Assembly: GCA_051294905.1 (NCBI GenBank)
Contig: CM119382.1
Span: forward strand, 7,626,001-7,690,000
DNA: 64,000 nt
Source of the DNA: Botryllus schlosseri
Taxonomy: Eukaryota
Reading direction: 5' to 3'
This document shows positions 36,949-57,787 of the stretch, in pieces (position 1 is the stretch's first letter; each line of letters begins with the position of its first letter). The notes under the pieces were generated by a model. It did no database searches, had not been told where the DNA came from, and saw nothing but the letters and a program-made list of their open reading frames with translations. The translations under genes and the position numbers were made by a program.

Positions 36949-37008
36949 TAAACTTCATCAGCATCATGGAAAGTTCATACAATTAGTTAATAATCATCAA
37001 TAAGAACC

Positions 37009-40000
37009 ATGAGTGTTCCGGTGAAGGTATTCACCGGTTTAAGGAAGGCTCACAATATCGCCGACCATATGATCAATCACGAAATAATACACGTTGTCGT
37101 CACGACATCTTCCAAATTCGACGAACTGGCTGAAAAATGCTCCGTCCATTGCGGCATCAAGCCCATGTACGCTTCCTTATTCGCCATATGGGACGCGCGT
37201 AACAAAGTTTGGGCGAATCTGGGAAATTACATTTTCCCGTTGCAGGACTATAACGGTATGGCCGGAGAGGATACCACAGATGGATGTACTTTCGAGTTCA
37301 GAATACGTTTTCTCATGAAAACAGAAACCACAGTGAATGGGCAAAAAGGTGAATCACAAAGATGGGACGCTTACATTGAAGGCGCCAGCCGCGTTATGGA
37401 CAAAGTAATCGTTGACTATTTGTACCGACAAAAGCGCAATGACTTTTTGTTTGATAACATCGCACTGGCGTTAGGCACTGGCGCCGACGATGACTCATTT
37501 TCTTTGGCACTCGGAGTCGCAGCATTAGATCTGTTGTGTCTGTCTCAAATATCTAAAACTAAACTTTCTAACCTCGAAAAGAGTGTTCCCGTGAAGCAGT
37601 TGTTGTCGAAATCGTTCAGAGACCGCCTGCGCGAATACAGCTTTGTAAACCGTTGGCAGATCAAACTAAAATTCAAACACTTCGTAAAGTATCTGATACC
37701 AGCCGCGCAACGTTGGGAAGAAAACGGGCATGAGTTAGACTTCTTCCTGCAACGTTACCTCCTTAATTTAGAACTCTGCACCACGACGTACGGTGTGGAA
37801 CGTTACAATTTAGCCAGGAATGGATACATCACAGTGTCAGCTGATAATGGAATAACTCTTCACGGTGATGAGAATAAGGAAGAGAAATGGTGCGATTTCT
37901 CGGAAATCACGCACATGACGCTGCAGGTTCGGTCGCATGACGATACCGGGTCCGGACAGGTTGTTGAACAAGACACGGCCCAAGAAAATTTTCCGCAAAA
38001 CGCATACATCGTTTGCATCAGTAAGCTTGACGGCACTTGCAAAAATTTCAGCATGGAATCGGGCACAAGCGCCGGGAATCTAGCGTCTTGCATTGATGGT
38101 TATTACAGATTATTAGTTGACGCTCATCATTACTTATGCAAGGACGTGTGCTCACCTGATTTAGTGCGGCATCTACGTTTGAAGTGTCACGGGCCTATAA
38201 CGTGCGGGTACGCTGAGGATCTGCTCCAGGAAAGACACAAGCTAGGAGTAGCGACCATTGGTGATTGCATAATACGTAAGAGCAGAGAAAGCTGGGATGA
38301 GTACTTCGTGAATTCGGTGCATTCTGTAGACCCGTTCAAGACTCGCAACTACAAAATGGACCGGTCTGATGAAAACTTACTGGGGCTTTACGGCTGGCCA
38401 GAGTCGCACAAGCACGAAAACTTGGAAAGTCTGTTAGAAGAATGTGCCGACGGTCGATATGATAACCGCAGAATACCGATAAACCCAAACAAAATAGTGG
38501 CGCCCAAACCGAAACACAAAAGCAATCTTATCGTCCGGCTTGCGCGCGACTCGCTGATCGCGATATATCCAACGGACGACCAGCAGATAAAGCCACGAGC
38601 TGTTCTTATCGAGCTTGACTCTAATGAGAAACAAAACGTCAAACACCTAGGCACTGGCACATTCACAATAGTGAAGCGGTACAAAAACGAGAACACGGGT
38701 CGATGCATGGTCTTCAAAAGCATACTTGAACAGAACGAGCCACAGCAGAACCACCACATTCACATGTCCTTTCAGGACTCCACCGCGCTGCTGAATCGCA
38801 TAAGTCATCGCCATTTCGTGCAGCACCTGGGAATGACTATGAGCCACGTTACCGGGATATGGCTCGAGTACCTGCCTCTCAAATCCATCACGCAGTATCT
38901 GGAGTCGCGCAATCTCGACCTGCGGAACAGTCCTTCGTGGTTTCTACAAGCTCTGTGGCAGGTGACGCACGCATGCCACTATCTTGAAGAAATGGGGTAC
39001 GCACACGGTAATTTACAGGGCAAAAACGTGCTGCTGCAGTGTGACACGCCGCAGCCGCATGTTAAGATATCTGACTCTGGCGTGCGTACCAGGCGGCGAG
39101 TTATTAACGATGGCCGGGACGCCAAGAAGTCTGTCGTGGAACCGATGCTGCCAGCGCCATGGCTGGCGTACGAATTTTGCTTTCGAGATAGAACTTCCGA
39201 TGTCAAATACCCTACCATAGAAGCCGACAAATGGAGTTATGGCGCGACGGTTTGCGAGATTTTGAACTGGGGTAAAATACGATTGGGACCTGTGTACGGT
39301 GGCGAGCTGTATGACCCTATGCGGCAATTTTACAAGCGCGGCGACTTGCGTGGCTGTCTTGGCCTGCCGGAATTGATTACAGGCAGTCAGGAGTTGTGCG
39401 ATTTAATCACAGCATGCTGGTCAGTGGTGCCTGATCAGAGACCGCCGTTTCAGAAAATTCTCAGAGAAATTGGCTCTGCGCTAACGGGCGATTATGTCTT
39501 ACTGTCAATGGCCAGTGAGCCAATCGTCGACGCTGTCAATGAGTTAGACCTCGATGTCCCGACTTACGAAGACGAGAAGCTAACCCGAATCTCCATACTG
39601 GGGGCTGGACATTTTGGTACCGTTGAGCTTTTCGCGTATGATCGTCATCGCAACACCATGACCGAGAAGGTAGCGATAAAGGAGCCGAAGTCGCCTTCTA
39701 TGAAACAGCACAAGGAGTTTATGCAGGAGATCGAAACCATGAAACGCATGAACCATCCGTACGTGGTAAGGCTTTTGGGAGTCACCGAACCGTCGGGACG
39801 TATCGTGATGGAGTATTTGAAAAACGGATCATTAGCGGACTTCATGAAGCGACGTAGGAATGAGGGTAATTGGCTGCCTACATCGCAGTTGCTGAGATAC
39901 TGCTCACAGATTGCCGAAGGCATGACTGCGTTGCAAGAAAAGCGTCTCGTCCATCGAGATCTCGCGCTTAGGAATATCTTACTCGCGGATAATCCAGCCG

Positions 40001-40452
40001 ATATTAAGATATCGGATTTTGGGTTGTCTCGTTTTGTACGAGAGGATCGGGAGTATTACTCTGGAAAGTTGGACGAGTTTCCGGCGTACTGGTACGCGCC
40101 CGAGTGCCTGCGCGCTGACTCAGTGCGGACGTTCGGGTTTGAATCTGACGTCTGGTCGTACGGCATTACGGTGTGGGAGTTATTTTCGTACGGCGATCGG
40201 CCCTGCCATAGAAATCTCGGTCCGATCGACCGGCCCGAGATGGTGGACAGGCTGCGGCGCTTGCTTGAGGACGGCGCTAGGTTGCCGCAGACGGAAAGAT
40301 GCCCCGACGAGGTGTACAAGATGATGCTCGCGTGCTGGGCGTATGACAAGCGCGGTCGGTTGAAGTTTGCCGAGATTAAAGCGGAATGCGACATGATGGT
40401 GCCGCTCGCGAACGCAAACCAACTGACGTACACCCGCAATTTCGAGGGGTGA
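37009..40452 (+). CDS. JAK: Janus kinase, copy A (FERM-SH2-JH2 pseudokinase-JH1 tyrosine kinase), single coding exon, 1147 aa
   Basis: FERM FEFRIRF and ALGVAALDL; SH2-like CHGPIT and IIRKS; JH2 LGTGTF, HGNLQGKNVLL, KISDSG (no HRD/DFG); JH1 GAGHFG, VAIK, HRDLALRN, DFG, activation loop EYY, WYAPEC, SDVWSYG. Start context ACCATG. Confidence 0.96.
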   Translation: MSVPVKVFTGLRKAHNIADHMINHEIIHVVVTTSSKFDELAEKCSVHCGIKPMYASLFAIWDARNKVWANLGNYIFPLQDYNGMAGEDTTDGCTFEFRIRFLMKTETTVNGQKGESQRWDAYIEGASRVMDKVIVDYLYRQKRNDFLFDNIALALGTGADDDSFSLALGVAALDLLCLSQISKTKLSNLEKSVPVKQLLSKSFRDRLREYSFVNRWQIKLKFKHFVKYLIPAAQRWEENGHELDFFLQRYLLNLELCTTTYGVERYNLARNGYITVSADNGITLHGDENKEEKWCDFSEITHMTLQVRSHDDTGSGQVVEQDTAQENFPQNAYIVCISKLDGTCKNFSMESGTSAGNLASCIDGYYRLLVDAHHYLCKDVCSPDLVRHLRLKCHGPITCGYAEDLLQERHKLGVATIGDCIIRKSRESWDEYFVNSVHSVDPFKTRNYKMDRSDENLLGLYGWPESHKHENLESLLEECADGRYDNRRIPINPNKIVAPKPKHKSNLIVRLARDSLIAIYPTDDQQIKPRAVLIELDSNEKQNVKHLGTGTFTIVKRYKNENTGRCMVFKSILEQNEPQQNHHIHMSFQDSTALLNRISHRHFVQHLGMTMSHVTGIWLEYLPLKSITQYLESRNLDLRNSPSWFLQALWQVTHACHYLEEMGYAHGNLQGKNVLLQCDTPQPHVKISDSGVRTRRRVINDGRDAKKSVVEPMLPAPWLAYEFCFRDRTSDVKYPTIEADKWSYGATVCEILNWGKIRLGPVYGGELYDPMRQFYKRGDLRGCLGLPELITGSQELCDLITACWSVVPDQRPPFQKILREIGSALTGDYVLLSMASEPIVDAVNELDLDVPTYEDEKLTRISILGAGHFGTVELFAYDRHRNTMTEKVAIKEPKSPSMKQHKEFMQEIETMKRMNHPYVVRLLGVTEPSGRIVMEYLKNGSLADFMKRRRNEGNWLPTSQLLRYCSQIAEGMTALQEKRLVHRDLALRNILLADNPADIKISDFGLSRFVREDREYYSGKLDEFPAYWYAPECLRADSVRTFGFESDVWSYGITVWELFSYGDRPCHRNLGPIDRPEMVDRLRRLLEDGARLPQTERCPDEVYKMMLACWAYDKRGRLKFAEIKAECDMMVPLANANQLTYTRNFEG

Positions 40453-41199
40453 CAGTAAGTCAGTTGAGAAATGATTCCGCTCTGATAACTTGAGTAGGTA
40501 ATAGGTATTGCTTACCGAATCAGCACTACCCACTCAAACGATCGCGTTTTTAGACTGCTGCCTGTTGTACAATATTTTCAATGGTTATATGAAATCTAGG
40601 CAATAGCCGTACCCGGACATCGTTTGATCAGTAACATAATACGGTACCTATACTTTTTCGGAGTATTCAAAGTAGGATTTACTTCCACTTCTACTTGAAC
40701 AGATTCTAGGCAAAACTGCTTGCGTTTTGAGCCTAAATTGTGAAAAGTAGAAATAATGCGGTGATGATCTTGAAGATGCGTGCCGCGATTTAGCGAGTCG
40801 CTACCTCCATCTCTAATTACTGCTGAAAACATGCTACCCCTTGACCAAATCTGCTTTTTGGAACTACTTGAGTAAGTAGTTTTGGATCATATATTTCTAC
40901 GTCCAGTTGAGGTAGTTTTGATGTGTTTCGGAAACTAATATTTATAAGTTTTTAATTGAAGTAGAAATTTGTGGCGTTACTTCTACTCCTGCCTGAGTAG
41001 CAATGATGACTTATTTGACCACTTTGCTCATAAAACCGTTTAGTAGAAGCGGAAGTCTTCGTGAAACAGCCATTTGAATATGCAGTGCAAGTCGGCCAGA
41101 CGAAATTGAGTAGGCCTACTCAAAAACAGGAAGAAGTATTTGTCATTGACCACCTCTGCGCACTACTGCCCTATTCACTGTATTCAGCTTAAGAATTGC

Positions 41200-44150
41200 C
41201 GGTTCTGTCACTCCTGGGTATTTTCAGCCGATTAGCGTCGAGATTGATCAGCATTAACGGGTACCACGTTCCTTGCATTATTATTATTAATAACATCATG
41301 TTCAGGCACCGCTAGCAACTATATTTTCATGGTCAATCGGGGATTCTAGATTCGCGATAAATGGAAATGCGGTGGTTGGTATTTCTACGCAATATGGTAC
41401 AAGAGGAAATGTGATGTATAGTACGTGTCGTACTGCGTTATCATGGTATGTTTGGTGTCATGTACACTTTTTACAGTATTCCCTATACCTCGTTGTCGTT
41501 ATCTGATTATCTGTCGCTGTGTGAAATGATATCAACCTTCCGACAGGGTTTACCGTCGCATTTCGTTGCCCGAAAACCCAGCGTTTTTTTATAAGATTGA
41601 CGCGGCGAAATCCTTGTTGCGTCACATATCAATATCAATACGTGAGCATTTCTGCTCGTGCTAGTCCTAACTCTTTTAAATCAACTTCGTCCAACGATTG
41701 AGCTCTTTCATAATTTTAAACTCGCTTCAAGCTGTGCAGCACAGCAGCGGCTTTCGACCCGTACTGGGTCGCAGGTCTGCTTTACGTCATCACTATTTTC
41801 GTACATTTTTAGCTATATTTTTACGATAGCCGAAACTACGTTTGCTGTCGCCAGTGTGATGTTTATTTTATCGCATATCGCCGTTCCGAGTCTCGGCCGT
41901 TCTCCTGCCTGTTTCACTGGTGACCTTTTGTTTCCTGTAATTTTCACGCGTCCGCCATGCCTCCGTGAGTAACAGCGATGCAGTCGTTAGCGCCAGTCTT
42001 TGAAAAAGACGAACTCTTGCCATACTTCGCCCGGTACGTTGTGCAACAATATTGAATCCATATGTTCCCGCGCGTCTTAAGGAACGGATTTTCTCACCGT
42101 TCCAGAAAGTTTCGGTAATTCACGCAGTTGGCCGTAAAGCTCGTTGCGGTTGCCTTAGTCATGCCCGCGGGCCCAACCGTAATCAAACACGGCGTTACCA
42201 ATATATGTGCTAATTTTCGATTGTGGGTAGGTTTACTTCGAAAGCAATCTTATTTTAGTGTCAGTCGCCTTGCAGTGTGCCTCAATCTGTGATTATTTTT
42301 GTACCGACGCGATGCATTCCCTAACAGTATTAAGATGCGTCTGGTGTGGTGTAGTTTCAGATCATCGCAGTTATTATTTTCAATTATTGGTCGCCGATAT
42401 TGTGTATGTGATATATTTTTCATCTTGTCAACCTTGACGTGTTTTTTTTTAAATCAAAAGTTGCCCAACCCAACTACTCGTCTACGGTAATTTTGTGATG
42501 AGAATAGGTGTTGAGCGGAATTTGAATTTATCAACATTATTCCCAAATTGCGTGCTGCACCCTGGGTGACTTCAGCCAAGCTTGCTATTCGGGTACAATC
42601 ATGTAATTCTATGGTACCGTCAGAAAATTCACCTTGTGTCTGTCACGCATCGTTGTTTTCTTTATGATACGTCACAGTGCTCGCTCATCGGTCATCGCTT
42701 TGCCTTGAGCCGACTGATCTAGAAGTTGGCAACGGCAACATTATGAGAGTATCGCATAGCTTGTTGAATGATCTCAACGGTGGGTTATGAAATATTCAGT
42801 CGTGTTGCGTGTGTCACCACTTCGTGCACGCAATCAGTTGCATTTTTGTGGCTCCAATAAAGTATTGATGCCCGATTGCATTATCACAACAAGGGTAGGA
42901 CCAGCCACGATCCAGTAGACAGGGACAGATGCAGCGCGTGTTGGAGCCTTCAGTAATCGTTGCTCAAATGCTCATATTGTTGAAGAAATGTAACCGATGT
43001 AACACAGCACGGCTATGTATTTCATGTCCACTGTTGGAAGTTCCGTCACTGTCTTCCAACGTAACCATAGGGAGTAAATCACACGCAGACAGCAGTATTG
43101 CTGGCAATCAGAAAATGATAGAACTCGCAACTGCAGGGAGGAAATCGCAGCGCTGATGCAACAAGAGGCTCGTTTGATTGCTGCAGCGGCGGACATTAAC
43201 GTTAGTCAACATCCTGTGTAATCATTGTGAGGTCACATATTTCGCGGCATTATGCAGAACGCAGCAATGTCTGGTCACAGGAAATGATCCATGCGGCATC
43301 GGGTGGGCTATGTATTGCAGAAGATGCTTTGGTCCTAGAATTCTGATGATTAAAAGTGACGCGCCGAAATAGGGAACCGCTAGCCCCAATGAGTGATCGC
43401 GTGCACGCATTAACGTTGAAGTAGAGATACTGTGATATTATTACTTGGGAATAATAAGTAGGCTATCTATACCTTGAATTGAACGCATCAAGTAGTTTAG
43501 CCTGTATGGCGTCATTCTGTCTACGTCCGAAAATTGGGGGGGGGAGGGGGGGAAACTACGCCCCTTCTGAAAGCAACACGCACTGCAGGGTCTTCGCAGA
43601 ACTGAAAATTCAACCTGCAATCTTGGATCATCTTTTGAAACTATGAACCCTAGCCTACTTTCGCAACGTTCCTCGGAACGTTTCATGGATCTTCGTTATT
43701 TACGCGTTAGTTTTTCTAAATCAGTAGGCATACTTGTACTTTTGCTTATATCTTGACCACTTTTGATAACCTTATGTCATGACATGGGTCTATCTATATG
43801 TGTTCTGTGTTTGGAATTGCGCGCACACGCGAAATCGCTCATCCATATTATAGCTTGGCTTTCGGCGCTAGTCAAGGTGGTGCATGATTTAGCTTTAGAC
43901 AAATCTCCCTTAAAGCAGATTTCGCACTCTTCGAAAATTTACCAACATTACTCGTAATTCTGATTTAGTAGCATCAATGACAACTTGGCAATCGCTGGTT
44001 ACATATATGGTGACGTCTGACGTGGCTATCAGCTGCATCTGAGGACCACAATCGATTGCAGTGATTGACCCCAAGTCTGTGGCAGGAAGGTAATCCGGCG
44101 TAAAAACTGCTGCCAAATAAAAATGCGGACCAGTCATCCACTGTAACAGT
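41200..44150 (-). pseudogene. Possible decayed intronless gene with TIR-like, death-domain-like and kinase-like segments (unit A copy)
   Basis: By-eye translation only: 41993-42130 VP*DAREHMDSILLHNVPGEVWQEF (death-domain-like); 41246-41337 DHENIV...GTWYPLMLI (kinase IV-V-like); ~43770-44030 DVTIYV...EICFKGDL...QAIIWMSDF (TIR-like). Many stops and frameshifts. Confidence 0.3.
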
Positions 44151-44261
44151 CACTACGTGACGAAGAAGAGTTAATAAATATGTATTGTAACTCAATTCTC
44201 ATTTCAGTCATATTTAATTGTCACCCGAGTTTTGGGAATTATAAGCTGCACAAGTGCACAT

Positions 44262-47035
44262 TAGGGATGGTGTGAACCTCTAAAACAGTGGTTCCCAACC
44301 TTTTTTGACTCATCGCCCCCTTATGAAGCTCAAAACATTTTCATCGCCCCCCTATAAGAAAGTGTCCCAAATCAGAGTTTTATTGACCTCTCGTTACCAT
44401 AGTTCCCTCTAAGCTGCGCGCATGCCCAAAGCGCATTGCTGACATGGCCTCTGCGCACAAAAAATAAAATACGATGTGATGACGTACTTTTAGTCAACAC
44501 CACAAAATTAAGAAGAAAATAGGGAATTCAGTAGTCAAATCAAAGTGATGACCTCTTTTAGTCGTTAGGCACTGCTGTCCAATGGACCGCGCAGTGAGTT
44601 GGTGATTGCGCAGCGCGCAGAGACAGGGGTTTGCCTAAATCCTTAACGTTCGACAATAAGTTAGATGGCCATTACTGTACTATTCGGTATCATAACAACT
44701 TACTGTCCTCCACAAATCTAACCGCACAGCTGGGTTATCAACGTTTTGGCAACCATTGTAGTTACTAGTAGGCTATAAAAATAAGGCACATCAAGAAGCA
44801 ATGTTGTGTCACGTCTAAAAAGTAGACGAATGAAAACTACATCGGTGATTGAAAATCAACTGTTTCGCTTGCTTCAAATGTCATGCATAGGGTTGCCAAC
44901 TGTGCGAAAGCTCTGGGAGTCAAATATTGCAAAACATAAGGCCAAACTGACTGAAATATAACTAAATTATCTTCATCGTTCGAGATGTCTTTACATGTTC
45001 ATAGAAATCAGTTTCAATTGTTCAATTTCGCTTATATTACGCTGCAAGAAAGTGGTGGAATTCATTTCCGTGCGCATAAGGTCGTCAAGCTCAAGGTACA
45101 TTTAGAGACGTCAAGAATTCTACTACCAAATCGACGCGAAAACGAACCAGCAAATTTTTCAATATATCAGCTTGCTTAGGTAGGCCTGGTAGCCTAAATG
45201 ATAACCTACACAACTAATTGACTCTTGCAATGCGGGAAGCAGATAAAGTGACTCGGGACCTATGATATCGATGTTATATATGACAACGGTTTGTGGGGCG
45301 TAATACCCCAGTATGCCAACTGCAGGTCAAAATTATGTAAAACAACCCCAATATGTTCTTGTGTGCGCGAGTAAGCACCACTTGCTACTTATGTAAATGC
45401 TGAAAACAAATTTTCACAGTGATAGTTGAAGAAATTCGAACGATCTGAAATAGTGCCAACGTGCCAATATTCCCAAATTTGGCCCAAATATGCGCTAATT
45501 GACAACACTGGCTACTTCGCAACGACACGACACACTAATTAGCAGTTCTGACAGAAGTGTTCGTGCTTGCTGGCTCACGCAGAAACTGCTGATGTTTGAT
45601 TATGATGTAACTATTGCGTTATAGCCATTGACAATAAACGTACGCCAACAACTCGATGGTATGAGGTTGAGAGAGCTCGTTAACAAGTGGAATAGATGTA
45701 ATATGATGCAAATTTGGACTTTAAATCTTTTTCAGGTATCACAGGCTAAATTGGGTCAAATATTGAGTCACTTTTCTATCAATATCGATCTCATATAACT
45801 TGAACTAAGCAATAAACCAAGCATATAATGAATAATATTTGATTGAAAGGTCCATTTTCGCCCCCTTCGTCCGTTTTCGCCCCCCTATCGCCCCCTTAGT
45901 TATTTTCGCCCCCCTAGATCGCCAAATCGCCCCCTGGGGGGCGATATCGCCCACGTTGGGAACCACTGCTCTAAAAGGTTCAGGTTCGTGTGAACGCGAA
46001 CCTTTTTGAAAGGTTCTGTGTGAACGCGAACGTGAACCTCATGACGTCACGTGACGTCATATTGCTAATTCCAAGCCTATCTTTCAATGTAGGGATAGCC
46101 TATATTAATGTACACACGATACGTAGCAACGACTCCTGCCACATAATGCCACAATTCTGAAGTACATATTGCCGTTTTAAACGTCGCTAAATGTATCAAC
46201 TGATGCAATCAAATGATATAATGCTCCCATAGAATGAATATCATCCGTCGCTTTTCACAATTTCGACGATGACTTGCCAGGGAATATAAGCTTACGCCCT
46301 AACGGTCTTGGCCAGATCGGACAATGTAGTCGGCTTCTGAGTATTGTTTCATTGATATTGAGCAGGGTGTAAATCAGATTTTTGTACTTGATACCGATGT
46401 TAGGCTACCCCACAAGTTATACAGCTGTAGCCAACACATTGCTGGCACGGGTTTAGTTTTAATGATATACAGTAAACATATGAAGTCAAGATTGACCCCG
46501 TACGCCTGCTAGATTTGTTACATCAAAAAACGATATTAATTTCATAGATTGGTTGAATAAGCATCATTCGCTGACTACATGTATAGTGTATGTCGCTCGT
46601 GATGCTGTGTGATTGTGGGCCAAGCTCACAGCAGAGAGTCACTAAACAATAAACATTCACGAACGGAAAGCTAGTAAAATCTTTGAGATTGTCAAGGTGC
46701 ATGCTCGTTTTGTGTTGATTTCTTATGCTGCCAGCCCCATGCATAGACCGCAGTTGAAATGCAATAAATTCGAACCACAGATGTCATAATGAAGTGAAAA
46801 TTCTAATATATGAAAAATGTCCACAGTGCAGAACCTACCAAGGTTCTGTTGCGAACGCGAACCTCTCAATTTCCGAGGTTCACACACAGAACGCGAACGT
46901 GAACCTCACGTTCACCTTCACATCACCCCTAGTCTACCTTGCATGTCGCATTTCACTGTTACATTTTTGTAGTGTTATGTTGATATGTAATGTATACGAA
47001 TAAAGATTCTCTCTCTCTCTCTCTCTCTCTCTCTA
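44262..47035 (+). mobile_element. TAGGGATG hAT family copy with nested insertions
   Basis: TSD gtgcacat on both sides; empty site at ~61733 in unit B. Carries an AATAAA+(CT)n retroposon 3' fragment at ~46932-47032. Confidence 0.85.
44286..45968. mobile_element. hAT element (CAGTGGTTCCCAAC TIR) nested in 44262-47035
   Basis: Perfect TSD ctctaaaa; further hAT-like ends inside (~44399, ~44886, ~45510). Confidence 0.88.
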
Positions 47036-47382
47036 GTGCACATGTTCCGCGCTACTAAGTTACATACGCGACGTCCTGAAGATATCTGACTAAATTTTGT
47101 AGGTTATGTTATTGCGTCTGCAATTAACCTCGACGGACGCTACTTTTCCGCAGCTGGTCGTCAATTGCCATATAACAATGCTCAATTGCTAATTCGTGAA
47201 TGTATTAAAGTAGTTACAGGACACCACAGTTGCATTCATTTCTTAGACTCGATGTCAGGGTTGTCAAACTCATCCGTAGCCTACTCCATACCCAATTACG
47301 AGATCGAATGACCAGACCATCTCCTTGGAACGGATCGTGGCGTGAACTCATCATACTCGCTCCTCAAACGAGAGGAATTGAA

Positions 47383-47846
47383 CAGGGTTGAAACCAAGTA
47401 ACAAGGTTCCGAGTCACAAGTCAATCTCACTTTATAGTTTTGACTCGAGTCAAGTGAGTCGCGTCATTTTCAATTCAGCACCGTGATAAGTCCAAAGTCA
47501 CGGAGTATAGAGTGTCGAGCCCGAGTCACGGTGTTTTGACTAGAGTCCAAGTCATTTTGCTGACTGTTCAATGTTCAGTTTCGAGTTAATGTCCTATAAA
47601 ACCTACTTTTTACAACTCTGCCCGTTGATATCGAATGCTTCGCATTCATAATATATATATATACAATTTTTCACACTTTTAACAGCTTCTATGGTAGCAT
47701 TTTCAAGTACTAGTACTGATAGACGAAATAATAATAGTGTGATAACTTTACTATTCTTTGAAATTACAATGAAATGCCTGTCTTGGTTTGGTAGACCCAG
47801 TCTCGGGCCAAAAAATCGCGACTCTAGTCGAGTCATTACAAGCGTC
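47383..47846. mobile_element. hAT-type MITE with gagtc subterminal motifs
   Basis: TSD gaattgaa/aaattgaa (7/8); absent from unit B (~62020). Confidence 0.65.
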
Positions 47847-48293
47847 AAATTGAATGAACGGTTATGATATTGTACTAGGGATGGGCAAAATGTATCATAA
47901 GTGCCGTACTCGAATCTGAATTGAGTCGAGAAGGAAGCTACGATTTTCTCGGGTTCTAGAATTGAATGACACAGCGAGATATTTTAACAGATAGTATTAC
48001 TCAGTTTCGTTACTTTCTCTTGCTAGAAGCCTTTAAAGTTAATCCCAGAGCGTTAGCCTAAGACTGCGTCCGTCGGTGGAAGCGGCATTTCTGTGAAATA
48101 GTGATTGAAGCTCAGTATGAAGTAGATATGGTCGAAAAATACCAAACCATCTTCAAAGTCAAGTGACTGTGTCAAGTGTGTATTACTCTGGAAATCTAGA
48201 CGAATTCCTGGCGTACTGGTACTGCGTACGCGCCTCAGTGCCTGCGCGCTCACTCAGTGCGGACATTATGATATGAATCTGGTGTCTGGTCGT

Positions 48294-51200
48294 TAGGGAT
48301 GGTGTGAACAGCTGAAAGGTTCAGGTTCGTATGAACGCGAACCTTTTTTAAAGTTTCTGCGTGAACGCGAACGTGAACCTATGGCGTCACGTGATGTCAT
48401 ATTGCTATTTCCATCCTTACACTTCGGTGAAGTGATATATTAATGCACAGTACACGATACCTAGCCACATTATGCTACAATAATTCTGAAGTACGTGATG
48501 ACTTCTTAAACGTTAGCCAATGTATCAACTGGAACAATCAAATGCTATAAATCTCATAAAGTCAGCACAGCATCTTAAGTCAATTTGCCAACAATTTCGA
48601 CGAGGACTTTCATGGAAATATAAGCTTACGCCTTAACGGTAGAGGCCAGACCGGGCAACGTATTCGGCGTCTGACTATTGATACATTGATATTGGGGTTT
48701 CTATACTCTCTACTGATATTACCCAATAAACAAGTTATACTGTACACAACACCCCAATCGCACGGACTTGGTTTTATGATGCATCAAACATATCAAATCA
48801 AGATGGATCACGTGAGCCTACTGGATTAAACAACGATGTATTATTTAAACCAGTGGTTCTTAACCTTTTTGGCTTCGCGGACCCCTTTTGACCGTCGCGG
48901 ACTCTCGCGGACCCCCTGAAGTTTTAGTTCAATTTTAGCTCTATTATGGTGCAACCTCCATATCTGTCTTGTGCAAATATGAACTGTAGGCTTGTGATAA
49001 ACAGCAAAATATTCACTTTTCTTGAAAATAACATCATAGAAATTGGTAGACTTTTATTATTTCAAAGCTAATTTTGCTGCAGTATTTCTTGAAGTACGTG
49101 GTCGTGTCTTGAAAATCCACGTCTTCGTTTTGATAGAAACGAGGAGTGCCGAAAACCATTTCCGCAAAGATAGATGGAGGCTAATGCAATATTACCGCAT
49201 AACGCTTCCGACGATACTTTTGGTGTGATCGCAACATTTATGGCACCAAAATGAAGAAACATATATTTCATGAACATATCACGTCCAGCATCTAGCGCAG
49301 GGACGAGCAACATACAGACCACGGGCCGGACTCGGACCGCGACGGCATTTTGATCGGCACGCAGAGAGTTTCTACCGTCAAAGTAAAATCCTAATCTAAG
49401 AGTATAGACAAATTTTATGCGCCAAAGAATGGATCCAAGTTTTCCAACCTGAGAAAGACTGTCATCAAACTACTTGTTCTGTTCGGGTTTACATATAGGC
49501 TATATTTACGAGCAAACATTTTCGGCCATGAACAATTGAACATTAACAAGACAAGGCTGCATACCAATGTAACTGGTGATATGAATTTCAGGAATGAAGC
49601 GTAATGCTTTGATAGCAACGAAACACTCCTTTTTCATCAAAAAAGCAGCCTTATTGTCGATAGGGCATCCGCAATAAGAATGCGCCAAATTTGATAGCCG
49701 AGCTTTAAGAGCAGGTATATCATTGTCCGATTTATGACGGGTGTCAGCCGAAAATATCCGGGTACATTTCAATATGAATATACTATTCAATTGTATATTG
49801 AAGTTCTGTACCTCCAAGAAGCTGTTTAAATAGTGGTTATGTATATCACAGGATAAAATGGATTTCGTGGCGAGGTTTCAATCCCTGCATTGGGACAAAT
49901 TAGGGATATAATTCGGAAATTTTTATTTCAAACGACTGTACTGTACACTAATTTGATGAGACTGACAACTTCAAATCGAGAAGGTTTCGCAGACATTACG
50001 AAGTCGCCATGATTGACGTTACTATCTCCATAACAAAACGTCTCTAAACAGCAATATGTTGGTATCAGCAGGTTAATGGAAAACTGGCAATGAAAATGAA
50101 TTTCTACACTACGATAGTTCATGCCAGACGATTATTATGGCGGTATGTGAGTACGAGGTTTTAGCAGTTGTGGTGCGAAACTACCTCATGCTTTCCAAAT
50201 TAAGAAATAAAATAAGAATTAGAATATAAACCATACTAAAAATTTAGAGGTCTCGTGGACCCCCTGAAATTGCTTCGCGGATCCCCGGTTGAGAACCGCT
50301 GGTTTAAACGGATTTCATTGATTAGTTGAATAAGCATTAGGGATGGTATGAACCTCTGAAAGGTTCAGGTTCGTGTGAACGCGAACCTTTTTGGAAGGTT
50401 TTGTGTGAACGCGAACTTGAACCTCATGGCGTCACGTGACGTGATATTGCTAATTCCAGCCATACATTTCAGTGAAATGATTGTTTATATTTTGTACACG
50501 ATACCCAGCGACGACTCGGGCCACATAATGCAACATGCTGAAACTGCCATTTTAAACGTAGCCAAATGTATCAACTGGGGCAATTAAATGATATAATAAT
50601 CCCATCAATGTCAAAATCAATGTCATCCGTCGCTTTGCCAACAATTTCGACGGGGACTTGCAAAGGAATATAAGCTTACGGTCAAGGCCAAACCAGAAAA
50701 TGCATTCGGCATCTGAGTATTGCTACGCTGATATCGAGCAGAGTGTAAAACGGGTTTTCATACTTGCTATCGATATTACCTCATCCACTGTAGTAGCCAA
50801 CACCACAATCGCACGGTTGTGGTTTTATGATAAAATTAACATTGAACATATGAAATCAAGGCTGACCCCGTAGGCGTGCTAGAATTTTTACATCGGACAA
50901 CGATATCTACTTTGATTGATTAGTTGAATAAGCATCATTCGCTGACTGTCTATTGTACCTACATGTAGTGTATTTCGCTCCTGATGTTGCTTGATTGCGG
51001 GTCCAGCTCCCAGCAGATAGTCAGTAAATTTTCGAGCAAACTTTTGTAACAAAACAAGTAAAATTTTTGAGATTGTCAAGGTGCATGCTCGTCTTGTGTT
51101 GATTTTTATTTGCTCCTAGACCTATCCATATAGTGGCCGGCAGTTGAAATGCAATAAATTTCTACCAAATATGTTATAATGAAGTGAAAATTGTAATATA

Positions 51201-51320
51201 TATAAAAAAAAAGGTTCACAGTGCAAAACCAACCAAGGTTCGATTGTGAACGTGAACCTCTAAATTTCGGAGGTTGACACACAGAACGCGAACGTGAACT
51301 TCACGTTCACACCATCCCTA
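48294..51320 (+). mobile_element. Composite of two TAGGGATG hAT copies (partial 48294-50337, full 50338-51320) splitting the JAK fragment
   Basis: Outer TSD ctggtcgt/ctggtcat (7/8). Confidence 0.85.
48851..50301. mobile_element. hAT element nested in the composite
   Basis: TIR cagtggttcttaacc / ggttgagaaccgctg; TSD atttaaac/gtttaaac. Confidence 0.82.
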
Positions 51321-51539
51321 CTGGTCATATACGGCGATTGACCCTGCCGCAGAAATCTCGGTCCGACCGATCGCCCGAGATGGTGGACAGGCCGCTCGAA
51401 GATGGCGCTAGGTTTCCGGAGACGAAAATAACCCCCAACTATGTGTACAGGATGATGCGAGATTGCTGGGCGTATGACAAGTGCGGGCGGTTGAAGTTTG
51501 CCGAGAGCGGAACGCGACAGGCTGGTGCCGCTCGCGAAC

Positions 51540-52374
51540 GGGATATTCCGAACCTGGACAACAAAAGTTGGAAGCACCGCATTCCCAAATCTTCCGAAAT
51601 TTGGTGCATGCATCGATGAGTCAATTTCGATGAAAATAAAGTTTATTTGAGGGAAATTGAACTCCGGGGTCAAAAGTTAGGTCATTTTGAAAATTGACGA
51701 TTTTCTGTTCATTTTAGTTCTGCAGCATTCAGGTTTTATCAATGTAAAATTAGACAAGGTGTAAACAGACGTTGGATTACGGTTGAGATTTGGCACTGAG
51801 TTTTCTGAGAAGCTAGTCTATTGGTCTATATCCCCATGTGGTATTAAATGCCATGTGGTGTAGTGTTAAAGGTGAAATTGGGGTGGAACTTGATCGGTAG
51901 TCTGAAATCGGTCAAGCATTACACAATTAGGAATGCGAATTGTTCAAAACCCTTTAAAAATATTCCAGCGAGTAGGGTATCATATGACTCAACTTATATT
52001 CATCACTGCCACTGAAGACAATATATGTCAAGTTTCAACTACCTATTTGAAACCAAGAGCTGTTCCGTGGGTATATATTAATGAGAATAGATATTAGCTA
52101 CTCATTGCTCCCGCCGTTTATCCGCCCGTTGCTAAATTTCTCAACTTTGACATTCAGAGTTTTCTTTTTTATAAGGAGCACAACTTTACCGGAAGCAGAA
52201 AATGAGCAGAAAATCGTCAATTATCAAAATGACGTGACTTTTGACCCCAGATTTCAATTTTCCTCAAATAAACTTTTTTGTGTTTGAAATTATCTCATCT
52301 ATGCATGTACAAAATTTCAGAAGATTTAGGAATGTGGTGGTTCCAACTTTTGTTGTCCAGATTGGGAATGGCCC
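51540..52374. mobile_element. MITE with ~140-bp TIRs (GGG...CCC termini) at the junction of the JAK fragment and unit B
   Basis: 51540-51680 is the reverse complement of ~52240-52374; no TSD, consistent with an adjacent deletion. Confidence 0.75.
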
Positions 52375-53384
52375 GATAGTGAATAAAAAAACGTTACAAT
52401 ATGAAGCCAGTGATGTTCGATCTTTGGTAGAGTTGAAAGGATATCGTCAACATTGGTCCAATGCAAAGCCATATTGTCATTTTCGAACATGTTGAAACCG
52501 ATAGAAATAATGCACAGCACGATTTGCGGGACGCATATCAACCGGGGTTGCAGTCACGTCGTGTGGATTATAAACCGCTGGATGGAACGAAAGAGCAACC
52601 AGAGTGGGCACATATTTGGGTCTGTTTATTTATAGATAACCAACCTACTATAAAATAGTTATCTATAGTCTGTCGAACTGCAGATATCAGGAGCGTGCGT
52701 GGAGCTGCAGTGCAAGTGTCCAGGCGAGGGAGATTATTTTATTGCTCCGGAATGAGATTTAAGAGACCGAATTTTGGATATGCAGCTATGCTGTCCTAGA
52801 ACATGCTACATAATGGACGTAACTCTGATGATATAGTAGTTCGTGTACTAATTTACAACCTCCCTTACAACATATTTAGGCTATGCATGGCATTGAATAT
52901 AGACTGTGAATAGGAACTTAACGATTTAAGCAAGCAATATTGCACATTTGAGTTCTGATTTGGCTGTGAAGTGTCATACAATGACGGGTGACCTCTGACC
53001 TCATACATCGTTAGCCTTAGTGCCATGTCATTGAAGCATTTAAATCTGTAATCTTGTTCATCAACTTGAACAGTGTGTATAGCCTATTTTCTGAAATTGA
53101 ACTAAAGTCAATGAATGTGCTATTCATGGGCATTTGTGAAGGTCTAAACCAGCTGCGCTTTAGTTTTATCATGGAATTATTCATTTAACGGAGTCGCATA
53201 CTTTGTGAGCTATTACCTCGTTGGATAGGCCTACACTATATATATAATGAATCGAAAGATTGACTTCGAATCATCGAATGGTATTGATAAATGTCTCTAA
53301 CTCGTTGAATTAATTCTACCACAGTGAACTTCATCACAATCACGGAAAATCCATACTATTAAGTAATAATCAGAATTAACAACC

Positions 53385-56300
53385 ATGAGTGTTCCGGTTA
53401 AAGTCTTCACCGGATTAAAGAAGGCTCAGAATATCACCGAGCATATGATCAATCACGAGATAATAGACGTTATCGTCACAACATCTTCAAAATTCGATGA
53501 GCTGGTTCAAAAATGCTCCGTCCATTGCGGCATCAAGCCCATGTACGCTTCCTTATTCGCCATATGGGACGCGCGCAACAAAGTTTGGACAAATCTGGGA
53601 AATGACATTTTCCCGTTGCAGGACCATAACGGTATGGCCGGAGAGGATACCACAGCTGGATGTACTTTCGAGTTCAGAATACGTTTTCTCATGAAAACAG
53701 AAACTACAGTAAATGGACAAAAAGGGGAATCACAAAGATATGACGCCAGCCGGGTTATGGACAAAGTAATCGTTGAATATTTGTACAGACAGAGGCGCGA
53801 TGACTTTTTGTTTGATAACATCGCACTTGCGCCAGGGACTGACGCCGACGATGACTCATATACTTTGGCACTCGGAGTCGCAGCATTAGATCTGTTGTGT
53901 CTGTCTCAAATATCTAAAACTAAGCTTCAGATCCTCGAAAAGAGGGTTCCCGTGAAACGGTTGTTGTCAAAATCATTCAGAAATCGCCTGCGCCACTGCG
54001 GCTTGGTAAACCGTTGGCAGATCAAAGTAAAATTCAAACACTTCGTACGGTATCTGATACCAGTCGCGCAACGTTGGGAAGATAGCGGACATGACTTGGA
54101 CTTATTCCTGCGACGTTACCTCCTTAATTTAGAACTCTTCACCGCGACGTATGGCGTGGAACGTTACGATTTAGCCACGAAAGGGTACATCACAGTGTCA
54201 GCTGATAATGGAATAACTCTTCATGGTGATGGGAAAAAGGAAGAGAAATGGTGCGATTTCTCCGAAATCACGCACATGACACTGCAGGTCCGGTCGCATG
54301 ACGATACTGGGTCTGTCCAGGTTGTTGAACAAGACGCCGCCCAAGAAAATGTTCCCCAAAGCGCATTCATTGTTAACATCAGTAAGCTTGACGGCACTTG
54401 TAAAACATTCAGTATGAACTCGGGCACAAGCGCCGAAAATCTAGCGTCTTGCATTGACGGGTATTACAGATTGTTAGTTGACGCTCATCATTACTTATGC
54501 AAGGGCGTGTGCTCAACTGATTTAGTACAACACATACGTTTGAAGTGTCACGGGCCTATAACGTGCGGGTATGCTGAGAAACTGCTCCAGGAAAGACACA
54601 AGCTAGGAGTAGCAACAGTTGGTGATTGTGTAATACGTAAGAGCAGAGAAAACTGGGATGAGTACTTTGTGAACTCGGTACTTTCTGTAGACCCGTTCAA
54701 GACTGGCAACTACAAAATGGACCGGTCCGACGATAACCTGCTGGGACTTTACGGCTGGCAGGAGTCGCACAAGCATGAAAACTTGGAAAGTCTGTTAGAA
54801 GAATGTGCCGAAGGGCGGCATGATAACCGCAAAATACCGATAAACAAAAGCAAAATCTTAGCGCCAAAACCGAAACACAAAAGCAATCTTATCGTCCGTC
54901 TATCGCGTGACTCGTTGATCGCGATATATCCGACGGACGACCAGCAGATAGGGCCACGGGCTGCTCTTATCGAGCTTGACGCTAATGCGAAACAAAACGT
55001 TAATCATTTAGGCACTGGCGCATTCACAATAGTGAAGCGATACAAAAACGAGAACACGGGCCGATGCATGGTCTTCAAAAGCATACTTGAACAGAACGAG
55101 CCACAGCAGAACCACCACATTCACACGTCCTTTCAAGACTCTACCGCGCTGCTGAATCGTATAAGTCATCGGCATTTCGTGCAGCACCTTGGAATGACTA
55201 TGAGCCACGTTACAGGGATATGGCTCGAGTACCTGCCTCTCAAATCCATCACGCAGTATCTGGAGTCGCGTAATCTCGAACTGCGGAACAGTCCTGCGTG
55301 GTTTTTACACGCTCTGTGGCAGGTGACGCACGCATGCCACTATCTGGAAGAGATGGGGTTAGCGCACGGTAATCTACGGGGAAAAAACATACTTCTGCAG
55401 TGTGACGCGCCACAGCCGCATGTTAAGATATCCGACTCTGGCGTGCGTACCAGGCGGCGAGTTATGAACGATGGCCGGGTCGCTAAGACTTCGATTGTGG
55501 ATCCGATGCTGCCAGCGCCGTGGCTCGCGTACGAGTTTTGCTTTCGAGATAGATCTTCTGGTATCAAATACCCTACCATAGAAGCCGACAAATGGAGTTA
55601 CGGCGCTACGGTTTGCGAGATTTTAAACTGGGGTAAAATACGATTGGGGCCTGTGTACGGCGGTGAACTGCATGGCCCTATGCGGCAATTCTACCAGCAC
55701 GGCGACTTGCGTGGCTGTCTTGGCCTGCCGGAATTGATTACAGGCAGTCAGGAGTTATGTGATTTAATCACAGCATGCTGGTCAGTGGCGCCTGATCAAA
55801 GACCGCCGTTTCAGAAAATTCTCAGAGAAATTGGCTCTATACTAACGGGCGGTTATGTCTTACTGTCAGTGGCTAGTGAGCCAATCGTCGAAGCTGTCAT
55901 TGAGTTAGACCTCGATGTCCCGACTTACGAAGACGAGAAGCTAACACGGATTTCCATATTAGGGGCTGGACGTTATGGTACTGTTGAGCTTTCCGCATAT
56001 GATCGTCATCGTAACACTTTGACAGAGAAGGTAGCGATAAAAGAGCCGAAGGATTCTTCTTCTATGAAACAGCACAATGAGTTTATTCAGGAGATCGAAA
56101 CCATGAAACGCACGAACCTCCCGTACGTGGTAAGGCTTTTGGGGGTCACCGAACCATCGGGACGTATCGTGATGGAGTATTTGAAAAATGGATCATTAGC
56201 GGACTTCATGAGGCGACGTAGGAATGAGGGTAATTGGCTTCCAACATCACAGTTGCTGAGATACTGCTCGCAGATTGCCGAAGGCATGACTGCGTTGCAA

Positions 56301-56816
56301 GAAATGCGCCTCGTCCATCGAGACCTTGCGCTTAGGAATATCTTACTCGCTGATAATCCTTCCTATATTAAGATATCGGATTTTGGGTTGTCCCGTTTTG
56401 TACGAGAGGATCGGGAATATTACTCTGGAATAATAGACCATTTTCCGGCGTTCTGGTACGCGCCTGAGTGCCTTCGCCCTGACTTAGTGCGGTCATTTGG
56501 CTTTGAATCTGACGTCTGGTCGTACGGCATTACAGTGTGGGAGTTATTTACGTACGGTGACTTTCCCTGTCATGAAAATCTTCGTTCGGTCAGCAAGTCC
56601 GAGATTGCGGACAAGCTGCGGCGCTGGCTCGAGGATGACGGTAGGTTGCCGCAGACAGTCAAGTGCCCCGACGAGGTTTACAAGATGATGCACGAGTGCT
56701 GGGCGTATGACAAGCTCAAGCGGTGGAAGTTTGATAAGATTAAAGCGGAATGCGACAGGCTGGTGCCGCTCGCGAACGCAAACCAACTGACATACACCCG
56801 CAATTCCGAGGGGTGA
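53385..56816 (+). CDS. JAK: Janus kinase, copy B (tandem paralog), single coding exon, 1143 aa
   Basis: Same architecture with catalytic motifs intact (GAGRYG, VAIK, HRDLALRN, DFG, EYY). Colinear with copy A apart from a 15-nt and a 3-nt in-frame indel. Confidence 0.96.
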   Translation: MSVPVKVFTGLKKAQNITEHMINHEIIDVIVTTSSKFDELVQKCSVHCGIKPMYASLFAIWDARNKVWTNLGNDIFPLQDHNGMAGEDTTAGCTFEFRIRFLMKTETTVNGQKGESQRYDASRVMDKVIVEYLYRQRRDDFLFDNIALAPGTDADDDSYTLALGVAALDLLCLSQISKTKLQILEKRVPVKRLLSKSFRNRLRHCGLVNRWQIKVKFKHFVRYLIPVAQRWEDSGHDLDLFLRRYLLNLELFTATYGVERYDLATKGYITVSADNGITLHGDGKKEEKWCDFSEITHMTLQVRSHDDTGSVQVVEQDAAQENVPQSAFIVNISKLDGTCKTFSMNSGTSAENLASCIDGYYRLLVDAHHYLCKGVCSTDLVQHIRLKCHGPITCGYAEKLLQERHKLGVATVGDCVIRKSRENWDEYFVNSVLSVDPFKTGNYKMDRSDDNLLGLYGWQESHKHENLESLLEECAEGRHDNRKIPINKSKILAPKPKHKSNLIVRLSRDSLIAIYPTDDQQIGPRAALIELDANAKQNVNHLGTGAFTIVKRYKNENTGRCMVFKSILEQNEPQQNHHIHTSFQDSTALLNRISHRHFVQHLGMTMSHVTGIWLEYLPLKSITQYLESRNLELRNSPAWFLHALWQVTHACHYLEEMGLAHGNLRGKNILLQCDAPQPHVKISDSGVRTRRRVMNDGRVAKTSIVDPMLPAPWLAYEFCFRDRSSGIKYPTIEADKWSYGATVCEILNWGKIRLGPVYGGELHGPMRQFYQHGDLRGCLGLPELITGSQELCDLITACWSVAPDQRPPFQKILREIGSILTGGYVLLSVASEPIVEAVIELDLDVPTYEDEKLTRISILGAGRYGTVELSAYDRHRNTLTEKVAIKEPKDSSSMKQHNEFIQEIETMKRTNLPYVVRLLGVTEPSGRIVMEYLKNGSLADFMRRRRNEGNWLPTSQLLRYCSQIAEGMTALQEMRLVHRDLALRNILLADNPSYIKISDFGLSRFVREDREYYSGIIDHFPAFWYAPECLRPDLVRSFGFESDVWSYGITVWELFTYGDFPCHENLRSVSKSEIADKLRRWLEDDGRLPQTVKCPDEVYKMMHECWAYDKLKRWKFDKIKAECDRLVPLANANQLTYTRNSEG

Positions 56817-57787
56817 CAGTAAGTCTGTTGTGATGGGCTTCCGCTCTGATAGCATGAAAAGGTTTTGATTACATTATTTGTCCACTCAAACGGTGACGTT
56901 TCTACACTACTGCCAGTTCTACAATATTTTGTCTGGTTATATGAAATTTAGGCAATGGCCATACCCGGAGATCGTTTGTCCGTGATGAAATACATATACT
57001 TTTTCTGAGTATTTAATGTAGGTTTTACTTTTACTTCTATTTGAACAGTTTCTAGCCGAATATTGCTTTTTGCGTTTTATAGAAAATAGTTTTGTGCTGT
57101 TTTTGCGTCACTTTTGTGATTGAAATAAAGTACGAATTTGTTTAAATATGTAAGTATTTTGTCACTGACCGCCTATGCGTATTACTGCTGTATTCGGAAT
57201 TAGCGTTGCCGGTTATGTCACTCCTAGGTATTTTCGGCCCCAGGGTACTCGGTTATCAACATCAACGGGGACCACGTTCCTTGCATTATTATCAATAACC
57301 TCATGTGTTCAATCACCGCTGGTAACTTATTTTCATGGTCAATCGGGGATTCTCGATTCGTGATAAATGGAAATGCGGCGATTGGTATTTCTACGCCATA
57401 TCGTACAAAAGGAAATGTGATATATAATACGTGTCGTACTGCGTTATCATGGTATGTTTGCTGTCATGTACAGTTTTTACAGTATTCCTTATACCTCGTC
57501 GTTATCCGATTATTACCTATCGCTTCATGAAATGATATCAACCTTCCAACAAGGTGTAATATCGCATTTCATTGCCCTGAAACCGATCATTTTCATCAGA
57601 TTGATGGGCGAAATCCTTACTGCGTCACGTCGATATTGATACATGAGCATTACTGCTCGTACTAGGGCTAACCCTTTTTCATCAACTTCGTTCAACGATT
57701 GGGCTCTTTCATAATTTTAAGCTTGCTTCAAGCTGTGCTGCACAGCCACGGCCTACGGCTTGCATTGGGTCGCAGGTCTTCTTTACG

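What the first reader, a model, noticed from the sequence alone, without database searches (positions are those of the whole stretch)
37009..56816. Tandem pair of full-length Janus kinases with the entire CDS in one exon
Seen: two uninterrupted 3.4-kb ORFs with complete JAK architecture and intact catalytic motifs, 16.4 kb apart inside a segmental duplication, in a genome whose neighbouring GPCR is intron-rich. Known: vertebrate JAK1/2/3/TYK2 have more than 20 exons. Inference: a retroposed or fully intron-stripped JAK was amplified in tandem and both copies were kept functional. This may be a lineage-specific JAK expansion serving an independently evolved cytokine or immune system.
Basis: partly seen in the sequence, partly recalled or inferred. 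Interest (0 to 1): 0.8.

Follow-up and report, generated by a model that had tools for sequence, protein, structure and literature searches.

The report
Two single-exon sea-squirt JAK genes
This sea-squirt genome has two intact, intron-free Janus kinase genes side by side, but intron-free JAKs occur in every sea squirt checked and other species have duplicated theirs too, so this is an ordinary local gene duplication.

Summary
ORF A (37009-40452, 1147 aa) and ORF B (53385-56816, 1143 aa) are uninterrupted. Both have the full JAK layout (FERM, SH2-like, pseudokinase, kinase) with intact catalytic motifs, and they are 86% identical.

- **Only JAKs in the genome.** They are the only JAK loci in the 495-Mb assembly, so no intron-containing parent exists.
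- **Single-exon state is old.** Seven JAK genes from five or more other tunicate lineages, including Styela clava and Clavelina lepadiformis, are also single ORFs on genomic DNA.
- **Not unusual here.** Syk-, Tec- and RYK-type kinases of this genome also sit in one open frame.
- **DNA-level duplication.** A roughly 9-kb unit was copied, flanks included. Flanks and 4-fold sites diverge equally (K2P about 0.2-0.28), which argues against conversion limited to the coding sequence. A decayed third JAK 3' fragment lies between the copies.
- **Lineage-specific but not unique.** Styela has its own tandem pair and Clavelina its own unlinked pair.
- **Selection.** Overall dN/dS is 0.26. A is conservative (about 0.18). 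B evolves faster (about 0.47, still below 1).
- **Expression of B.** B had only a few RNA reads in the samples read, in the sense orientation where the library shows it.

No link to cytokine or immune function was tested. This is a new member of a known kind, of modest interest.

The parts
37009..40452 (+). JAK-A: complete single-exon CDS, 1147 aa. FERM about aa 1-380, SH2-like about 381-540, JH2 pseudokinase about 545-830, JH1 kinase 861-1125. This is the conservative copy.
53385..56816 (+). JAK-B: complete single-exon CDS, 1143 aa, same architecture (JH1 856-1121). This is the faster-evolving copy and had few RNA reads.
35231..44246 (+). Duplicated unit A: upstream block 35231-35628, 5' flank from 36636, the CDS, about 275 bp of 3' flank, and downstream blocks 41134-44246.
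52430..61726 (+). Duplicated unit B, collinear with unit A. Non-coding blocks are 77-84% identical (K2P 0.18-0.28).
48180..48304 (+). Pseudo-JAK fragment 1, matching JAK-A codons about 1015-1054 (A 40053-40159, 80% nt identity), with an in-frame stop.
51297..51540 (+). Pseudo-JAK fragment 2, matching JAK-A codons about 1050-1122 (A 40189-40414, 80.5% nt identity), with a stop and a frame break. About 3 kb of retroelement DNA separates it from fragment 1.
45969..46938 (+). Retroelement 3' piece in the spacer. Sister copies lie at 48293-48827, 50337-51320, 24584-26649 and 33286-34230 (-). The (-) copy sits next to an RVT_1 ORF at 34209-34913.
50337..51320 (+). Retroelement piece that abuts pseudo-JAK fragment 2.

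Best explanation
A and B are the only two Janus-kinase genes of a tunicate genome. By JAK phylogeny it is a stolidobranch ascidian whose nearest named relative is Styela. The intron-free coding sequence was inherited: all ascidian JAKs examined share it, so the introns were lost before these lineages split. I infer reverse-transcriptase-mediated loss or replacement of the parent gene by a retrogene. In this lineage a DNA segment of about 9 kb, holding the whole gene and its flanks, was later duplicated in tandem, when neutral divergence was about 0.2-0.28 per site lower than now. A third copy survives only as a decayed 3' fragment, and retroelement insertions widened the spacer. Both full copies stayed under purifying selection. 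A is the slow, ancestral-like copy. B accumulates twice as many amino-acid changes, most densely in the JH1 C-lobe, and had only a few RNA reads in the samples read. This fits a specialised or partly relaxed paralogue. By homology, not tested here, both should bind the Box1/Box2 tails of gp130-type cytokine receptors through FERM-SH2, trans-phosphorylate on the activation-loop YY pair, and phosphorylate STATs.
For: Architecture and motifs. Only two JAK loci in the 495.5-Mb assembly: the full-length query, the N-terminal 850 aa and fish JAK2 each hit only A and B outside the kinase domain. Tunicate affinity: Styela clava 50%, Ciona 41%, fish JAK2 29% identity, and a tunicate JAK clade at 98-100% support. 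Single uninterrupted JAK ORFs on genomic DNA elsewhere: L021/L022 (16-23 kb contigs), L023 (20 kb), two Styela clava genes on chromosome OZ123521.1, two Clavelina genes on two chromosomes whose neighbours are intron-bearing, and L042 on a 1.1-Mb contig. The frames were checked. DNA-level duplication of the whole unit. K2P is 0.26 at 4-fold sites and 0.18-0.28 in eight non-coding blocks. No poly(A) tract at the unit's 3' end. Lineage-specific timing: A+B form a clade at 100/100, sister to P0001+P0002. Selection: dN/dS 0.26, dS 0.26. Polarised with the L025 outgroup, A has 43 nonsynonymous and 66 synonymous changes and B has 86 and 52 (Fisher p 5e-4). Both are below neutral expectation (p 5e-18 and 2e-5). 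At sites invariant in 13 other tunicate JAKs, B has 3 private changes and A has none. The pseudo-JAK fragment at similar divergence carries stops, which shows what unconstrained decay looks like here. Expression: probable RNA runs from several studies hold 0.30-0.60 of A's words and 0.06-0.32 of B's. Raw RNA reads on B are few, and the single-cell reads lie in the sense orientation with a small pile just 3' of the stop. Contigs from two independent runs cover B at 95-99% identity with no indel in the CDS.
Against: The Ciona JAK gene structure could not be fetched, so 'all ascidians' is extrapolated from the lineages that could be read. The taxa behind P0001, P0002, P0004, P0006, P0034 and P0035 are unnamed. 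The route of intron loss (retroposition or cDNA recombination) is inferred. No biochemical function was tested.
Confidence: 0.85

Rival explanations
1. B is a non-functional or dying copy: an unexpressed duplicate that has simply not yet been hit by a disabling mutation.
For: B has twice the amino-acid changes of A at an equal synonymous rate. dN/dS is 0.64 in the last 90 codons. Only a handful of RNA reads lie on the CDS in 12.9 M bulk and 22 M single-cell reads. RNA-like runs hold fewer of B's words than of A's.
Against: The 1143-codon frame is open at about 13% nucleotide divergence, whereas the pseudo-JAK fragment of similar divergence has stops. The B-branch N:S ratio is below neutral expectation (p 2e-5). 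All catalytic motifs are intact. B has only 3 private changes at tunicate-invariant sites, within the range of other JAKs (1-15). The single-cell reads are sense-oriented and pile up just 3' of the stop. No CDS indels appear in contigs of two other runs.
Confidence: 0.12
2. The tandem pair is old, shared with the Styela tandem pair, and looks young because gene conversion keeps homogenising the two coding sequences.
For: Styela clava also has two single-exon JAKs in tandem on one strand. In each of three or four lineages the two copies group together, which is the pattern concerted evolution produces.
Against: About 5 kb of non-coding flank is duplicated as well and diverges as much as the 4-fold sites (K2P 0.18-0.28 against 0.26). 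4-fold divergence varies only moderately along the gene (0.19-0.36) and no stretch is near-identical. Clavelina's two copies are on different chromosomes yet still group together. tblastx finds no flank similarity between the Styela locus and this window.
Confidence: 0.05
3. One reading: a recent retrocopy of an intron-rich parental JAK was made in this lineage and then amplified.
For: The CDS has no introns. Reverse-transcriptase elements surround the locus.
Against: No other JAK locus, with or without introns, is found in 495.5 Mb using three different queries. There is no poly(A) tail at the 3' end. Seven single-exon JAK genes occur in other tunicate lineages.
Confidence: 0.02
4. A and B are two haplotypes of one locus that were wrongly assembled in tandem.
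For: Tunicates are highly heterozygous. Read depth could not be checked.
Against: The copies show 13% nucleotide divergence with indels and asymmetric protein evolution. Their spacers and retroelement content differ, and a pseudo-JAK fragment lies between them on one contig. Runs from several independent studies hold words of both copies. Tandem JAK pairs are real in Styela.
Confidence: 0.02

Closest known systems
Tunicate JAK genes: Ciona intestinalis jak (F6TV83), Phallusia mammillata 'JAK Janus kinase', and the Styela clava and Clavelina lepadiformis 'JAK2-like' RefSeq genes
   Same: They share domain order and length (1111-1166 aa) and form one well-supported clade. Where genomic DNA could be read, the CDS is a single exon. 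Styela has a tandem pair, as this genome does.
   Different: Identity to named species is only 39-52%. The duplication here is independent of those in Styela and Clavelina. The spacer here is about 13 kb with a pseudo-JAK remnant, against 1.35 kb in Styela. The literature found here counts a single JAK for sea squirts, based on Ciona (PMC3296744).
Vertebrate JAK1/JAK2/JAK3/TYK2
   Same: They share the FERM, SH2-like, JH2 and JH1 layout, the HGN pseudokinase motif, the activation-loop YY pair and the HRDLAxRN and DFG motifs.
   Different: Identity is 27-33%. Vertebrate genes have a shared multi-exon structure (PMC3296744; more than 20 exons by general knowledge) and arose by whole-genome duplication rather than local duplication. 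The tunicate JH1 lacks part of the vertebrate insertion loop in the alignment. Pfam's SH2_1 score is below its cut-off.
Drosophila hopscotch
   Same: It is an invertebrate JAK with the same architecture (P0025).
   Different: It is very divergent (27% identity, long branch) and is a single-copy gene.
'Orphan' retrogenes, where an intronless copy replaced its intron-bearing parent (PMC3548309)
   Same: The gene is intronless and functional with no parental copy in the genome. This could explain how the ascidian ancestor lost all its JAK introns.
   Different: No retroposition hallmark survives. The event, if it happened, predates the ascidian lineages sampled. cDNA-mediated intron loss in place fits equally well.

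Membership tests
Janus kinase (JAK) family | N-terminal FERM domain (F1, F2, F3/PH-like) | tested here: met
   FERM_F2 E 4e-12 (A) and 8e-11 (B), Jak1_Phl E 5e-7 and 1e-6, FERM_F1 E 2e-4 and 4e-4, the last slightly below the Pfam cut-off.
Janus kinase (JAK) family | Atypical SH2-like domain between FERM and JH2 | tested here: inconclusive
   SH2_1 (JAK type) matches profile positions 2-90 of 108 at the right place, but at 19 bits against a cut-off of 27. The stretch aligns to mouse JAK1 in 7t6f. The HGP motif and Arg423 are invariant across JAKs.
Janus kinase (JAK) family | JH2 pseudokinase with an altered catalytic loop (HGN) and DPG-type motif, placed before JH1 | tested here: met
   Two PK_Tyr stretches per protein. 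H666-G667-N668 are invariant, with DSG at 689-691.
Janus kinase (JAK) family | C-terminal active tyrosine kinase (JH1) with a tandem YY in the activation loop | tested here: met
   PK_Tyr E 1e-106 and 4e-103. GxGxxG, VAIK, HRDLALRN, DFG, EYY and APE are all present in A and B.
Janus kinase (JAK) family | Groups with known JAKs in a phylogeny | tested here: met
   Best hits in three searches are JAKs. A and B nest inside the tunicate JAK clade. In the tree of JAK-family sequences, that clade and the vertebrate-plus-hopscotch sequences are the two sides of the midpoint-rooted tree.
Janus kinase (JAK) family | Binds cytokine-receptor Box1/Box2 and phosphorylates STAT | not testable with these tools
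   Needs biochemistry. Other readers' unchecked notes say STAT and SOCS genes exist in this genome.
Processed retrogene (recent retrocopy) | An intron-bearing parent elsewhere in the genome | tested here: not met
   Three whole-genome searches find only A and B.
Processed retrogene (recent retrocopy) | Poly(A) tail remnant at the 3' end, target-site duplications, and homology ending at the transcript ends | tested here: not met
   There is no A-tract at the 3' end. A/B homology runs about 1.8 kb upstream and 3.8-4.9 kb downstream of the CDS. Target-site duplications were not searched for.

The most novel reading that the evidence does not exclude
Ascidians repeatedly and independently duplicated an ancestrally single-exon JAK: a tandem pair here, a separate tandem pair in Styela, an unlinked pair in Clavelina and possibly P0001/P0002. 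Each time one copy stayed conservative and the other evolved fast. This would be a convergent route to two-JAK signalling, comparable to vertebrate heteromeric JAK pairs, with the fast copy adapted to lineage-specific receptors such as those of immunity, allorecognition or regeneration.
Probability: 0.25. Interest if true: 0.5.

Novelty: new member of a known kind. Interest (0 to 1): 0.3.

Why it matters
Reviews of JAK-STAT evolution count one JAK for sea squirts, based on Ciona (PMC3296744). This locus and the loci fetched from Styela and Clavelina show that several ascidians carry two, gained independently. They also show that the ascidian JAK lost every coding intron, whereas the vertebrate genes are multi-exon. 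This gives a tidy natural case for studying complete intron loss and asymmetric divergence after duplication of a signalling kinase. It also names the two kinases to consider in any JAK-inhibitor or STAT study in this animal. It does not point to a new kind of system.

Tried and rejected
- **Intron-containing parent or further JAK copies.** Whole-genome searches with full-length A, its N-terminal 850 aa and fish JAK2 found none.
- **Retroposition hallmarks.** There is no poly(A) tract at the 3' end.
- **Synteny.** tblastx of the Styela, Clavelina and L022 flanks against the window gave no hits. The DUF7802 neighbour of L021 is absent from the window and from L023.
- **Convergent gene downstream of each JAK.** The ten longest ORFs there have no Pfam match at E 0.1, and the region diverges at the neutral rate. 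No coding gene is supported.
- **Gene structures and exact records.** Ciona F6TV83, Styela P0003 and the exact A and B proteins are not on record in the contig collection.
- **Literature.** Searches for intronless or tandem tunicate JAKs and for the SRA/ENA accessions of the unnamed contigs found nothing relevant.
Full report
**1. Is it there?**

Yes. Their starts are 16,376 bp apart.

Each has FERM_F1/F2, the JAK1 PH-like F3 piece and two tyrosine-kinase stretches. A JAK-type SH2_1 match sits in the right place at a sub-threshold score (19 bits against 27). The best full-length solved relative is mouse JAK1, 7t6f (E 6e-99).

The two proteins are 86% identical. In a 12-sequence alignment with tunicate, fish and insect JAKs, all catalytic residues of JH1 are invariant: GxGxxG, VAIK Lys891, Glu907, HRDLAxRN, DFG, the second activation-loop Tyr and APE. 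The JAK pseudokinase marks HGN and DxG are also present, and both A and B carry EYY.

**2. What genome is this, and are there other JAKs?**

The window is C12:7626001-7690000 of a 495.5-Mb, 219-contig assembly. The nearest named homologues are Styela clava JAK2-like (50%) and Ciona (41%). Fish JAK2 is at 29%. So this is a tunicate. By the JAK tree it is a stolidobranch ascidian close to but outside Styela. Other readers' notes on this genome also call it a sea squirt (unchecked).

Searching the whole assembly with full-length A, with its N-terminal 850 residues and with fish JAK2 finds only A and B outside the kinase domain. They are therefore the genome's JAK genes, not retrocopies of a surviving intron-bearing parent.

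**3. Is the single exon special to this lineage?**

No. Proteins from collections built with prokaryote-style gene calling can only be full length if the gene has no introns. Several such tunicate-clade JAKs turned up. Fetching their DNA gave these loci:
- P0004 is one ORF on 16- and 23-kb contigs.
- P0006 is one ORF on a 20-kb contig.
- P0035 is one ORF on a 1.1-Mb contig.
- Styela clava chromosome OZ123521.1 carries two JAK genes whose annotated ranges equal their coding lengths (3336 and 3339 bp).
- Clavelina lepadiformis has two JAKs on two chromosomes (3339 and 3414 bp). Their annotated neighbours span far more DNA than their proteins need.

I confirmed that all these frames are open. In the tree these sequences cover both major branches of the tunicate JAK clade. 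The intron-free coding sequence therefore predates their split.

Vertebrate JAKs share one multi-exon structure (PMC3296744). The introns were thus most likely lost on the tunicate stem. How they were lost, by retrogene replacement or by cDNA recombination, is inference.

Single-exon multi-domain tyrosine kinases are also common in this genome. A Syk-type (SH2-SH2-kinase), a Tec-type (PH-BTK-SH3-SH2-kinase) and a RYK-type (WIF-kinase) gene each lie in one open frame.

**4. How was the pair made?**

Self-BLASTN shows collinear homology well beyond the ORFs. It runs from 35231/52430 upstream to 44246/61726 downstream, interrupted by insertions. The 3' flank has no poly(A) tract.

K2P distance in eight non-coding blocks is 0.18-0.28. 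At 428 four-fold sites of the CDS it is 0.26, and no window is near-identical. Hence one DNA-level duplication of the whole unit, followed by independent divergence. Conversion limited to the coding sequence does not fit.

Between the copies lie two decayed JAK 3' fragments, at 48180-48304 and 51297-51540. They match codons of about 1015-1122, are about 80% identical to A, and contain a stop and a frame break. About 3 kb of retroelement DNA splits them. They are the remnant of a third copy, and they serve as an internal example of neutral decay at this age.

**5. When?**

A and B are sisters (100/100). Together they are sister to P0001+P0002, two unnamed relatives at about 70% identity. Styela's two genes are sisters (65% identical), and so are Clavelina's (45%). 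So JAK was duplicated independently at least three times in ascidians. In each pair one branch is several times longer than the other.

**6. Selection.**

Between A and B, dN/dS is 0.26 and dS is 0.26. Polarising differences with the P0001 coding sequence (L025) gives 43 nonsynonymous and 66 synonymous changes on A, and 86 and 52 on B. Synonymous rates are equal, and the N:S ratios differ (Fisher p 5e-4).

Both branches have fewer nonsynonymous changes than neutrality predicts (p 5e-18 and 2e-5). This corresponds to omega of roughly 0.18 for A and 0.47 for B.

B's excess is densest in alignment columns 1001-1100, the JH1 C-lobe. At sites invariant in 13 other tunicate JAKs, A has no private change and B has three: D823G, F864Y and S1056T. 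That is within the range seen in other species.

**7. Expression.**

Runs from nine studies hold A's words. Probable RNA runs hold 0.30-0.60 of them. The same kinds of runs hold 0.06-0.32 of B's words. Their RNA status is a guess.

- In about 12.9 M bulk RNA reads, about 5 lie on or just upstream of the CDS.
- In about 22 M single-cell reads, about 8 lie on the CDS and about 5 pile up at 56831-57027, just 3' of the stop. All are in the orientation I take to be that of a + strand mRNA (general knowledge of 3'-end single-cell libraries, not stated by the tool).
- Short contigs from two other runs cover much of B at 95-99% identity with no indel inside the CDS.

B is thus probably transcribed at a low level.

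**8. Verdict.**

The interpretation needs revising. This is a lineage-specific DNA tandem duplication of an ancestrally single-exon ascidian JAK, and it is one of several such duplications in ascidians. It has a conservative copy, a faster copy and a dead third copy. Function as a receptor-associated kinase upstream of STAT is inferred from homology only, and any tie to a novel cytokine system is untested.

I found no paper describing intron-free or duplicated tunicate JAKs. However, the Styela and Clavelina genes are already in public annotation as 'JAK2-like'. I class this as a new member of a known kind, of modest interest.

Noticed in passing
L004:1468-3234 (-), L005:361-2289 (+), L007:1450-3390 (-) (G000 C5, C15, C10): Syk-type (SH2-SH2-kinase, 588 aa), Tec-type (PH-BTK-SH3-SH2-kinase, 642 aa) and RYK-type (WIF-kinase, 646 aa) genes each lie in a single open frame. 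14 of the 38 non-JAK kinase hits sit in open frames of 500 aa or more. Wholesale intron loss seems common among this genome's tyrosine kinases.
   Followed up: partly
L039:10001-13336 and L039:14689-18027 (Styela clava OZ123521.1): Styela clava has its own tandem pair of single-exon JAK genes 1.35 kb apart on one strand. They are 65% identical, and the upstream copy has the longer branch.
   Followed up: partly
L040:10001-13339 and L041:10001-13414 (Clavelina lepadiformis OX392443.1, OX392439.1): Two single-exon JAK paralogues on different chromosomes are 45% identical and sisters in the tree. This is a third independent duplication.
   Followed up: partly
window 48180-48304 and 51297-51540: The decayed 3' end of a third JAK copy is split by about 3 kb of retroelement DNA. 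Nothing of its first ~1015 codons was detected.
   Followed up: yes
window 24584-26649, 33286-34913 (-), 45969-46938, 48293-48827, 50337-51320, 62322-63611 (-): Six or more copies or pieces of one retroelement family (70-84% identical). One carries an RVT_1 ORF (34209-34913, -). Mostly 3' pieces, as expected for 5'-truncated non-LTR or Penelope-like elements. The family was not typed.
   Followed up: no
window 41134-44246 and 57152-61726: The duplicated downstream flank was flagged by another note as a possible decayed TIR/death/kinase gene. Its longest ORFs have no Pfam match, and the two copies diverge at the neutral rate.
   Followed up: partly
window 36940-36960 and 53315-53335: A conserved pyrimidine-rich ...TTCTACCACAG sits about 60 nt upstream of each ATG and looks like a 3' splice or trans-splice acceptor. 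Its use was not tested.
   Followed up: no
   Followed up: partly
window 57800-58200: A highly expressed or high-copy repeat: depth reaches thousands in RNA-like contig sets, and there are many chimeric reads and back-joins.
   Followed up: no
P0038 (2911 aa; ENA contigs up to 801 kb): A giant ORF matches the tunicate JAK profile in 10 stretches (1138 bits). This is an unidentified multi-kinase protein from an unnamed assembly.
   Followed up: no
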